DNA of 64,000 nucleotides, taken from assembly GCA_964057225.1 (NCBI GenBank), contig OZ059897.1, positions 5,332,001-5,396,000 on the forward strand. The letters run 5' to 3'. The notes below the pieces were generated by a model, which had not been told where the DNA came from, searched no databases, and saw only the letters and a list, made by a program, of their open reading frames with translations. Both the position numbers and the translations under genes were made by a program. The stretch's first letter is position 1. Each line of letters opens with the position of its first letter. This DNA is from Auanema rhodensis. Its lineage: Eukaryota; Animalia; Nematoda. Positions 7,366 to 8,898 of the stretch are shown piece after piece.

Positions 7366-8898
7366 TTAATTTTGCAAAACCGTGCGAATAAATGTTGGAA
7401 GAACGAAACATGCTGAATGCATTTCCGAATTATAAAAACGCAAACCCATGTTGCTAACTTCTTCTTCAGAGAGAGTTCGAATTGGTTTTTTCACATCATA
7501 TTTCTGAAAAATATATCGAAATTTATGAAGTAGTGCTCTTGGTGATTTTATTATCATGCACAAATACAAACTTTCGAACAAATCAGATATCCCATCATTC
7601 CTGAAGGATAAGTGGAAACTGCCGAACTGCCATACTCCACAACATCAAATAAACGACGATTGAATTGAACTAAGTGCTGGACTAATTTAACATGAAGCCA
7701 CATGCATTCTCCTAGTAACACATGCAGTTAAGCTCATTATATAGCGATGATAATGTTTTAAATGTTAGTTTCAAATAAAAAAATTTCAAGTATGTAAGCA
7801 GCCCAATTAATAAACCTTTGATTTTGCGCATAATATATATCCCATAAGGCCCGTTGTATATGTTGGTACTGAAGCAGCAGCGTATAAAGCTAATGAGAAA
7901 AGTGATTCGCAGATTTTGAATAGTTTAGTTATAAGATTTATATCGAGCCAAGGACATTCTCCTAAAAGTTTGCAATAGCAATTTTTTCAAAAAGCAGAAT
8001 GCACCTTGCGAAGAAAGAATACCATCATCTTTCAGAGCGTCTTTCAAAAGAATGTAATAAGATTCTCCAAATAATGACTCAGCTGGACCTACCGGATCAG
8101 ATGAATCAGTTATAATAACATCAAACTCATTCTGAAAATAAGCATAAAATAATATTTTTATAGACACTGAAAAAACTTGTAGTTCACCTTGTGAGCCTTT
8201 AAGAACTCAAAACCATCGCCAACAAACAGATTCAATTTTGGATCATCGAAGCCTGATGACATTCCAGGCAAATATCTTAATCATAATTATTAACCAAATT
8301 TCAGATATACTTATTCACTTCTTGGAAACATCAATAACCATCTCATCAATCTCGCACATTGTAACTGATTCAACACATTTATGTTTCAGAACTTCTCGTA
8401 GAATTCCACCATCTCCTCCACCAATAACCAAAACCTGTAAATTTGAATTACATATATCTACAATGCATGTTAATGCCAATAACCTTTTTAGGATTTGGAT
8501 GAGCAAAAAGAGGAAGATGAGCAAGCATCTCCTGATATGAAAATTCGTCTCTTTCCGTAGCTTGAATAATACCGTCCAATACAAGTACATTGCCATATGT
8601 TGTACTAATAAAACAATAAACTTTGATAGAAAAAAAAATACCTTTCAAAAACTAAAACATCTTGATATTTACTTTTCTTATGGAACAGTACATTTTTTAT
8701 TTGTAATGAAAAGGCTTGACCTGGCCAAGCACCACCCATAGATACACCATCTGATTTTAAGCACTTGTTCCCCGTTTCTGAAATATCATTGCGGAATATA
8801 ATGAGAATAAATTTTATATAAGTTTTACCTTTGTTTTCAAATCTTGCGAGATCATCGGGTGAAAACTCCGTAAACCAACTATCAGCCAACTTGTTCAT
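7366..8898 (-). CDS. spds-1: Spermidine synthase (putrescine aminopropyltransferase) with a mutually exclusive exon pair
   Basis: Exons 8898-8829, 8777-8642, 8604-8484, 8434-8319, 8275-8188, 8131-8005, [7961-7816 or 7711-7572], 7503-7366. Motifs: [81 protein letters not shown]. Confidence 0.96.
7572..7711 (-). other. spds-1: spds-1 alternative exon B (canonical SPDS-like)
   Basis: ttactag|GA GAA...AAA|gtttgt, 140 nt, phase 1 to phase 0. Encodes [46 protein letters not shown]. Confidence 0.9.
7816..7961 (-). other. spds-1: spds-1 alternative exon A (variant)
   Basis: ttttag|GA GAA...AAG|gtttat, 146 nt, phase 1 to phase 0. Encodes [48 protein letters not shown] with no stops. Confidence 0.88.

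What the first reader, a model, noticed from the sequence alone, without database searches (positions are those of the whole stretch)
7572..7961. Spermidine synthase with two mutually exclusive active-site exons: one gene, possibly two polyamine synthases
Seen: two homologous exons in tandem, A (7961-7816) and B (7711-7572). Both start GA GAA TGY in phase 1, end in phase 0, have no stops and have GT-AG borders. Including both or neither shifts the frame, so exactly one can be used. They align without gaps (EC.WL..............LF....Y....V.TY..G.MGY..C.K) but are otherwise strongly diverged, which suggests an old duplication kept by selection. Established: this segment lines the amine-acceptor pocket of aminopropyltransferases (the Q..WLH and TYPSG motifs; human SRM Tyr241/Pro242). 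Exon B keeps the canonical WLH and TYPSG, whereas exon A has WLD and TYTTG. From memory, and needing verification, yeast spermine synthase Spe4 differs from Spe3 at the same two positions (WLN, TYTSG). C. elegans is generally described as lacking a separate spermine synthase gene. Inference: isoform A may accept a different amine (e.g. spermidine to spermine), so splicing would switch the enzyme's product.
Basis: partly seen in the sequence, partly recalled or inferred. Interest (0 to 1): 0.9.

Follow-up and report, generated by a model that had tools for sequence, protein, structure and literature searches.

The report
Alternative active-site exons in nematode spermidine synthase
This worm's only spermidine synthase gene has two tandem, homologous exons, of which one is used at a time, so it makes two enzyme versions differing in a moving part of the amine pocket; the pair is shared with C. 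elegans and distant parasitic nematodes and seems undescribed, but nothing found here shows that one version makes spermine.

Summary
Exon A (7961-7816, 146 nt) and exon B (7711-7572, 140 nt) are homologous, both 3n+2, and have GT-AG borders. Using both or neither breaks the frame.

Spliced RNA contigs from four runs of one study join exon 6 to A and to B in every run. One contig carries exon 6-A-last exon. Others carry B-last exon. Two runs also show an out-of-frame A+B form.

The pair is old:
- The order exon 6-A-B-next exon, always 3n+2, is present in genomic DNA of C. elegans, Toxocara and Halicephalobus.
- In a tree, 34 nematode A segments and 30 B segments form separate groups.
- In 14 species with both exons, A always has Asp213/Thr242 (human numbering) and B always has His213/Pro242.

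Published plant structures show that the swapped segment is a mobile helix carrying Glu208, a dimer-contact strand and the Tyr241 loop.

The spermine-synthase reading is weak:
- Trp28, which blocks longer amines, lies in a constant exon.
- Some nematodes keep only A, and one keeps only B.
- Asp213 also occurs in other animals' enzymes.

The Spe4 comparison could not be checked. A 2014 C. elegans catalogue of such exons omits spds-1. The scan had already noted the UGCAUG sites here (s1-421858).

The parts
8829..8898 (-). exon 1, with the start codon at 8898
   Evidence: Model. The junction 8777|8829 appears in RNA contigs.
8642..8777 (-). exon 2. It holds the AWPGQA motif with the Trp that aligns with human Trp28, so this residue is the same in both isoforms.
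8484..8604 (-). exon 3 (Tyr79 and Gln80 equivalents)
8319..8434 (-). exon 4 (GGGDGG motif, Asp104 equivalent)
8188..8275 (-). exon 5
8005..8131 (-). exon 6 (DSSDP catalytic and gate-keeping motif, Gln206 equivalent). Its donor is shared by both alternative exons.
7816..7961 (-). alternative exon A, 146 nt, 3n+2. It encodes ECPWLD...SVPTYTTG (Asp213, Thr242 in human numbering).
   Evidence: The e6>A junction is in 4 of 4 runs, the A>e8 junction in X3, and the A>B junction in X1 and X4. It falls in the A group in the tree.
7572..7711 (-). alternative exon B, 140 nt, 3n+2. It encodes ECMWLH...VSTYPSG (His213, Pro242). This is the type present in the solved C. elegans enzyme, 2b2c.
   Evidence: The e6>B junction is in 4 of 4 runs and the B>e8 junction in 3 runs. 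It falls in the B group, next to Auanema sp. JU1783.
7381..7503 (-). exon 8 (constant)
7303..7338 (-). exon 9, with the real stop codon at 7305-7303.
   Evidence: The joint 7337|7380 (cut +1) appears in X1, X3 and X4. The translation restores the conserved C-terminal AL[EQ].
7712..7815 (-). 104-nt intron between A and B. It is long enough to be spliced, so steric exclusion does not apply.
   Evidence: It is retained in a contig of X2.
7555..7726 (-). three UGCAUG hexamers bracketing exon B (starts at 7726, 7706 and 7560)
   Evidence: 3 of the 18 minus-strand sites in 64 kb fall within 172 nt. They are not conserved in C. elegans or Halicephalobus.

Best explanation
This is the spds-1 (spermidine synthase) gene of an Auanema-like rhabditid nematode. 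It carries an ancient pair of homologous, frame-exclusive alternative exons.

Shown:
- The exon 6 donor is spliced to either A or B.
- Each of A and B can be spliced to exon 8.
- The two in-frame mRNAs encode enzymes of 320 and 318 aa that differ only in 46-48 residues.

Shown by alignment to solved enzymes and by published structures: the swapped piece comprises
- Glu208;
- the mobile helix alpha8, which moves about 6 A on ligand binding and presses the Trp that closes the polyamine groove;
- strand beta12, which is part of the dimer interface;
- the Tyr241 loop;
- the next strand.

Inferred:
- Both products are working spermidine synthases, because all catalytic and dcAdoMet-binding residues are constant or kept, and because whole nematode lineages live with only A or only B.
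- The fixed differences (Asp/His at 213, Thr/Pro at 242, Pro at 210 in A, His at 219 in B) probably tune how the amine acceptor is bound and how the active site opens and closes (Km, rate, inhibition, possibly dimer pairing). They probably do not change the product outright.
- Exclusivity rests on the reading frame. A+B transcripts exist, carry an early stop and are probably removed by nonsense-mediated decay. They may also lower enzyme output.
For: Gene model and frames.

RNA junctions: e6>A and e6>B in 4 of 4 runs. One contig in X3 carries e6-A-e8. B>e8 is in X1, X3 and X4. A>B is in X1 and X4.

Only one canonical aminopropyltransferase gene in the 181-Mb genome. The two weak extra hits lack the DSSDP motif.

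Catalytic and binding residues Trp28, Tyr79, Asp104, Asp173, Ser174, Asp176, Gln206, Glu208 and Tyr241 are present in both isoforms.

Genomic order e6-A-B-e8, with both exons 3n+2:
- C. elegans: 146/146 nt
- Toxocara: 146/146 nt
- Halicephalobus: 143/143 nt
The pair is also present in Dracunculus and in part in Cooperia.

Tree: A (34 rows) and B (30 rows) are each one side of a branch, with support 90/82 and 88/82.

Fixed differences in 14 of 14 species that have both exons.

Lineages with a single exon, checked in DNA: Enterobius, Aphelenchoides and Onchocerca have only A. Ditylenchus has only B.

Structural roles of the segment: PMC6514230, PMC12812037.

Isoform usage of spds-1 shifts under acid stress in Litoditis marina (PMC13405938).
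Against: - No enzyme data exist for an A-type isoform. The solved C. elegans enzyme is B-type.
- All RNA evidence is assembled contigs from one study, so ratios, stages and tissues are unknown. The A-only junction was assembled in only one run.
- In two runs the assembled form of exon A was the out-of-frame A+B form.
- I could not measure how close residues 213 and 242 lie to the substrate.
- I did not show that the single-exon species lack a second gene elsewhere. Parasites might also salvage polyamines.
Confidence: 0.68

Rival explanations
1. Isoform A is a different aminopropyltransferase: a spermine synthase, a bifunctional spermidine/spermine synthase, or a synthase that accepts another amine. 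Splicing would then switch or widen the product in animals that lost the spermine synthase gene.
For: - Asp213 and Thr242 are invariant in A in 14 of 14 species. They sit at the start of the helix that shapes the groove bottom and next to Tyr241.
- Nematodes lack spermine synthase (PMC12803844).
- Spermine synthases arose from spermidine synthase duplicates in yeasts and plants, and a bifunctional enzyme exists in Lipomyces.
- The coq-2 exon pair switches substrate through two invariant residues (PMC7434440).
Against: - Trp28, stated to block longer amines, is in a constant exon and is kept.
- A-only lineages still need spermidine.
- Filarial A-type exons have Pro242.
- Asp213 occurs in full-length spermidine synthases of Priapulus and of unnamed non-nematodes.
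- Exon A finds no solved spermine synthase at E up to 10.
- The Spe4 resemblance is unverified.
Confidence: 0.12
2. Exon A acts mainly as a regulatory exon. Its inclusion together with B gives a transcript with an early stop that is degraded, so splicing sets how much enzyme is made. This might respond to polyamines, as with other genes of the pathway.
For:
- The stop falls 30 nt into B.
- The annotated 366-aa C. elegans protein joins A to B through a donor 10 nt downstream.
- 14 of 19 non-3n exon clusters in C. elegans depend on nonsense-mediated decay (PMC4165533).
Against: - The exon A peptide is conserved across clades III-V: 59% mean identity, with invariant motifs.
- The A-only contig in X3 is in frame.
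- Three lineages have A as their only exon.
This reading can hold alongside the best explanation, but not replace it.
Confidence: 0.1
3. The two isoforms are biochemically equivalent. The pair persists only because the two exons have divided expression between tissues or stages.
For: Either exon alone suffices in some lineages. All catalytic residues are shared.
Against: Several positions are fixed and differ between A and B in every species tested, including two beside the substrate site. Equivalent copies would not be expected to hold such differences over this time span.
Confidence: 0.1

Closest known systems
coq-2 exons 6a/6e of C. elegans and helminths (Tan et al. 2020, PMC7434440)
   Same: Both are tandem homologous exons of a metabolic enzyme, used one at a time. 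Both replace part of the substrate site. In both, one exon keeps the pan-eukaryotic residues and the other has two invariant substitutions near the substrate. Both pairs are conserved across parasitic and free-living nematodes.
   Different: For coq-2 the variant exon tracks a known metabolite (rhodoquinone) and genetics proves the switch. For spds-1 no distinct product is known, and either exon can be the only one in a lineage.
Verified mutually exclusive exon clusters of C. elegans (Kuroyanagi et al. 2014, PMC4165533)
   Same: The spds-1 pair consists of homologous exons of near-equal length and the same phase, not a multiple of three, so the frame (and probably mRNA decay) enforces exclusivity. 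The intervening intron is long enough to be spliced.
   Different: spds-1 is not among the 29 clusters in 27 genes listed there. Double inclusion was assembled in two of four runs here, so exclusivity may be looser.
Spermine synthases derived from spermidine synthase by gene duplication (budding yeasts, vascular plants; Li et al. 2025, PMC12803844)
   Same: In both, a duplicated copy of spermidine synthase sequence is kept for a very long time in a lineage.
   Different: Here only one exon is duplicated, not the gene. No spermine-forming activity or spermine pool is shown. The N-terminal Trp that limits the cavity is shared by both forms.
C. elegans spermidine synthase crystal structure 2b2c
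   Same: It is the ortholog. Exon B matches it best (58 bits).
   Different: The solved protein is the B type only. Exon A matches it poorly (27 bits) and matches human SRM better (42 bits).

Membership tests
Spermidine synthase / aminopropyltransferase (Pfam PF01564 with PF17284) | Match to the Spermine_synth domain above the curated cut-off | tested here: met
   Exon-by-exon hits reach 68 bits in the genome search. Exons A and B each score about 25 bits on profile positions 133-179. The 82%-identical Auanema protein P0156 carries PF17284 and PF01564.
Spermidine synthase / aminopropyltransferase (Pfam PF01564 with PF17284) | Catalytic and binding residues Tyr79, Asp104, Asp173-Ser174, Asp176, Gln206, Glu208, Tyr241 and Trp28 | tested here: met
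   All are present in both isoforms when aligned to a 302-aa mammalian SRM. Their roles are taken from PMC12812037.
Spermidine synthase / aminopropyltransferase (Pfam PF01564 with PF17284) | Transfers an aminopropyl group from dcAdoMet to putrescine | not testable with these tools
   This needs an enzyme assay. It is inferred for both forms from lineages that keep only one exon.
Homologous mutually exclusive exon cluster | Adjacent homologous exons with the same phase and near-equal length | tested here: met
   146 and 140 nt, both 3n+2, 18 of 46 residues identical. The same holds in C. elegans, Toxocara and Halicephalobus.
Homologous mutually exclusive exon cluster | Single-inclusion mRNAs exist for each exon | tested here: met
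   An e6-A-e8 contig is in X3. e6>B and B>e8 junctions are in X1, X3 and X4. All runs come from one study and are contigs, not reads.
Homologous mutually exclusive exon cluster | Double inclusion and double skipping are absent or removed by mRNA decay | tested here: inconclusive
   Both give early stops. A>B junction contigs exist in X1 and X4. Dependence on decay cannot be tested here.
Spermine synthase (EC 2.5.1.22) | Amine pocket long enough for spermidine, meaning the Trp28 block of spermidine synthases is absent | tested here: not met
   The Trp is kept and lies in constant exon 2. Its role is stated in PMC12812037 and PMC6514230.
Spermine synthase (EC 2.5.1.22) | Relationship to animal spermine synthase | tested here: not met
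   No spermine synthase chain appears among the PDB matches of exon A at E up to 10. The genome has no second canonical PF01564 gene.
Spermine synthase (EC 2.5.1.22) | Makes spermine, and spermine is present in the organism | not testable with these tools
   The literature reports spermine as not detected in C. elegans (PMC6780408). There are no data for this species.
Substrate-switching exon pair of the coq-2 type | One exon is pan-eukaryote-like and the other has invariant substitutions beside the substrate | tested here: inconclusive
   His213>Asp and Pro242>Thr are invariant in A. However, Asp213 is also seen in non-nematode enzymes, B has its own fixed changes (His219, Ser239), and distances to the substrate were not measured.

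The most novel reading that the evidence does not exclude
Nematodes, which lost the spermine synthase gene, still encode a second aminopropyltransferase inside spds-1. The A-type exon (Asp213, Thr242, Pro210) would reshape the bottom of the amine groove so that isoform A accepts a different or longer amine. Splice choice would then set which polyamine is made, as coq-2 splicing sets which quinone is made.
Probability: 0.12. Interest if true: 0.85.

Novelty: new member of a known kind. Interest (0 to 1): 0.62.

Why it matters
Spermidine synthase is essential, is a drug target in parasites, and is widely studied in C. elegans ageing and autophagy work. That work treats spds-1 as one enzyme, and the only solved and characterised nematode enzyme is the B form. 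A second, equally old form that differs in the mobile wall of the amine pocket means that knock-downs, structures and inhibitor screens have looked at half of the gene's output. The A form is the only one in filarial worms and pinworms, and it differs from the host enzyme at fixed positions. That could matter for selective inhibitors. The question can be tested directly in C. elegans with exon deletions and polyamine profiling.

Tried and rejected
1. Yeast Spe3 versus Spe4 at positions 213 and 242. No tool gave me a Spe4 sequence. A text search for the motif found nothing useful. The machine-read alignments in the supplement of PMC12803844 are visibly corrupted, with rows repeated, so I did not use them.

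2. Region-limited homolog searches returned only 25 and 4 candidates and added little.

3. Naming the non-nematode fragments that carry Asp213/Thr242. The cluster look-ups gave no organism names.

4. RBFOX-type control. The three UGCAUG sites around exon B cluster more than chance would give, but they are absent from the same region in C. elegans and Halicephalobus. I do not build on them.

5. RNA pairing that might enforce exclusivity. I found only an 11-nt, 10-of-11 complement between the start of the intron after exon 6 (8003-7993) and the start of exon B (7713-7703). About one such match is expected by chance in this stretch.

6. A second polyamine synthase gene. The weak PF01564 hits on other contigs (L005, L008) lack the DSSDP motif and gave no Pfam match for the pieces tested.

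7. Papers on the exon pair. Searches for 'spds-1' with 'mutually exclusive', and for 'Y46G5A.19', found nothing.

8. Codon-level dN/dS was not computed, because the species for which I hold DNA are too distant.

Full report
**1. The observation**

I rebuilt the gene on the minus strand. It has six constant exons (8898-8005), then exon A (7961-7816, 146 nt), exon B (7711-7572, 140 nt) and the last coding exons. All borders are GT-AG.
- Both alternative exons start GA GAA TGY, end on a codon boundary and are 3n+2.
- With both exons a stop appears 30 nt into B. With neither, a stop appears at codon 222.
- The peptides align without gaps at 18 of 46 identities. None of 100,000 shuffles reaches this.
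- Each exon matches positions 133-179 of Pfam PF01564 above the cut-off.

One correction: RNA contigs show a further 42-nt intron (7380-7339). The coding sequence therefore ends at 7303, with a C-terminus that fits relatives. The isoforms are 320 aa (A) and 318 aa (B).

**2. Expression**

Four runs from one study hold 54-58% of the sampled words of the locus, as spliced mRNA would. Laid on the window, their contigs lack most introns and confirm every junction of the model.
- Exon 6 is joined to A (7961|8005) and to B (7711|8005) in all four runs.
- B is joined to exon 8 in X1, X3 and X4.
- In X3 one 199-nt contig carries exon 6, all of A, and exon 8. This is the in-frame A-only mRNA.
- In X1 and X4 the exon A contig runs on into B (7711|7816). 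This is the out-of-frame double inclusion.
- X2 holds contigs that retain the A-B and B-exon 8 introns.
- Contig depths at the two exon 6 junctions are of the same order, so A is not a trace form.

Limits: these are contigs, not reads, and come from one study. Ratios, stages and tissues are unknown.

**3. The organism and the gene family**

- The window has 30.6% G+C.
- The B isoform is 82% identical to the spermidine synthase of Auanema sp. JU1783.
- A six-frame search of the whole 181-Mb assembly with PF01564 finds only this gene plus two weak hits that lack the DSSDP motif.
- The genome therefore has one canonical aminopropyltransferase and no spermine synthase. This agrees with Li et al. 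2025, who report the loss of spermine synthase from almost all nematodes (PMC12803844).

**4. Conservation**

A full-library search with exon A and a homolog search show two kinds of segment across nematodes:
- A type: ECPW[LI]D ... SVPTYT[ST]G
- B type: ES.WLH ... VSTYPSG

Genomic DNA shows the same order, exon 6-A-B-next exon, with both exons 3n+2:
- C. elegans chromosome II: 146 and 146 nt
- Toxocara canis: 146 and 146 nt
- Halicephalobus: 143 and 143 nt

Dracunculus also has both exons. Cooperia has A and the start of B at the end of its contig.

Many deposited gene models read both exons into one protein by running into the intron. One is a 366-aa C. elegans protein that joins A to B through a donor 10 nt downstream of A.

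In a tree of 73 segments, the 34 nematode A rows and the 30 B rows each form one side of a branch (support 90/82 and 88/82). Nematodes as a whole stand apart from other animals and fungi (88/79). The alignment has only 46 columns, so finer branches are unsure. One old duplication, before clades III, IV and V split, is the simplest reading.

In 14 species with both exons:
- mean identity is 59% among A exons and 66% among B exons;
- mean identity between A and B of the same species is 45%.

**5. Fixed differences**

Numbering is human and was checked on a 302-aa mammalian enzyme. Counts are from the 14 species with both exons.

| Position | A type | B type |
|---|---|---|
| 213 | Asp, 14 of 14 | His, 14 of 14 |
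| 242 | Thr, 14 of 14 | Pro, 14 of 14 |
| 210 | Pro, always | variable hydrophobic |
| 219 | variable | His, always |
| 237 | Ser, always | hydrophobic |
| 239 | Pro, always | Ser, 12 of 14 |

**6. What the segment does**

In the Arabidopsis enzymes, helix alpha8 with its preceding loop (residues 235-252) is one of four regions that move between the open and closed states. These are residues 1-17 of the alternative exon.
- Its start shifts by almost 6 A.
- It carries Glu236 (human Glu208) to the bottom of the polyamine groove.
- It probably pushes the Trp that forms the end wall of the groove.
- The loop before alpha8 and strand beta12 are part of the dimer interface.
- Tyr270 (human Tyr241) packs against the amine.
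(PMC6514230.)

Work on the human enzyme gives the same roles for Tyr241, Glu208 and Trp28 (PMC12812037).

The residues for catalysis and for dcAdoMet binding that lie outside the exon are constant. Glu208 and Tyr241, which lie inside it, are kept in both forms.

**7. Does A make spermine?**

Points in favour:
- There are fixed changes beside the substrate site.
- There is no spermine synthase gene.
- Spermine synthases have arisen repeatedly from spermidine synthase.
- The coq-2 exon pair of nematodes switches substrate through two invariant residues (PMC7434440).

Points against:
- Trp28, stated to exclude longer amines, is in constant exon 2.
- In genomic DNA, Enterobius, Aphelenchoides fujianensis and Onchocerca have a single A-type exon at this place.
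- Ditylenchus has a single B-type exon.
- Each form is therefore probably enough for the essential supply of spermidine.
- Filarial A-type exons carry Pro242.
- Asp213 is not special to nematodes. Both Priapulus genes have it, as does a group of full-length 288-aa enzymes from unnamed organisms. Asp213 together with Thr242 occurs in several unnamed fragments.
- Exon A finds no spermine synthase among solved structures.

**8. Best reading**

This is an ancient frame-exclusive exon pair that yields two spermidine synthase isozymes. They differ in the moving wall of the amine site and in part of the dimer contact. The differences most likely tune substrate binding, kinetics or pairing. The A+B form is probably a decay substrate and may also lower output.

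I put the spermine or other-product reading at about 0.12.

**9. Is it known?**
- Databases hold A-type and B-type proteins for several species.
- I found no paper that describes the pair.
- The 2014 catalogue of verified C. elegans clusters (29 clusters in 27 genes) does not list spds-1.
- One paper reports changed transcript usage of spds-1 under acid stress in Litoditis marina, without details.

I class it as a new member of a known kind.

Noticed in passing
window 7339-7380 (minus strand): A 42-nt intron near the 3' end is removed in RNA contigs of three runs. This moves the stop codon from 7368-7366 to 7305-7303 and gives a C-terminus (...TALQHADNTSEM) that fits relatives.
   Followed up: yes
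L013:3870-4425 (C. elegans chromosome II): The deposited 366-aa C. elegans protein P0123 contains both exon A and exon B, joined through a donor 10 nt past exon A (KDK-VNT-GES). No A-only C. elegans protein appeared among the best 120 hits.
   Followed up: partly
L014:2089-2358 (Halicephalobus sp. NKZ332): The intron between exon 6 and exon A is gone. The exon 6 donor G|GTGAGT doubles as the codons Gly-Glu-Cys of exon A, so the choice is between an internal donor and reading on.
   Followed up: partly
L017:5116-5256 (Dracunculus medinensis): The A-type exon reads PTYASA instead of PTYT[ST]G. The otherwise invariant Gly244 is replaced, so this copy may be decaying.
   Followed up: no
window 7555-7726 (minus strand): Three UGCAUG hexamers lie within 172 nt around exon B, out of 18 on this strand in 64 kb. 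They are not conserved in C. elegans or Halicephalobus.
   Followed up: yes
window 7993-8003 and 7703-7713: There is an 11-nt complement (10 of 11) between the start of the intron after exon 6 and the start of exon B. This is about what chance gives in this stretch.
   Followed up: partly
window 8605-8641, 7712-7815 and 7504-7571: Intron retention in contigs: run X1 keeps the 37-nt intron between exons 2 and 3, and run X2 keeps the introns on both sides of exon B.
   Followed up: no
window 6420-6900: Downstream of the gene, near-identical short reading frames recur about 350 nt apart (for example 6452-6547 and 6803-6898). This suggests a tandem repeat.
   Followed up: no
L005 (G000:C4:13397484-13397795) and L008 (G000:C7:6090235-6090363): These are weak PF01564-like stretches without the DSSDP motif. 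From memory they look like methyltransferase-like proteins with a spermidine-synthase-like fold, not polyamine synthases.
   Followed up: partly
P0185, P0208 and P0234: Halicephalobus has a second, diverged A-like gene (ESPWID ... TPTYISG). Priapulus caudatus has two spermidine-synthase-like genes on different contigs, both with Asp213 and one with Thr242.
   Followed up: no
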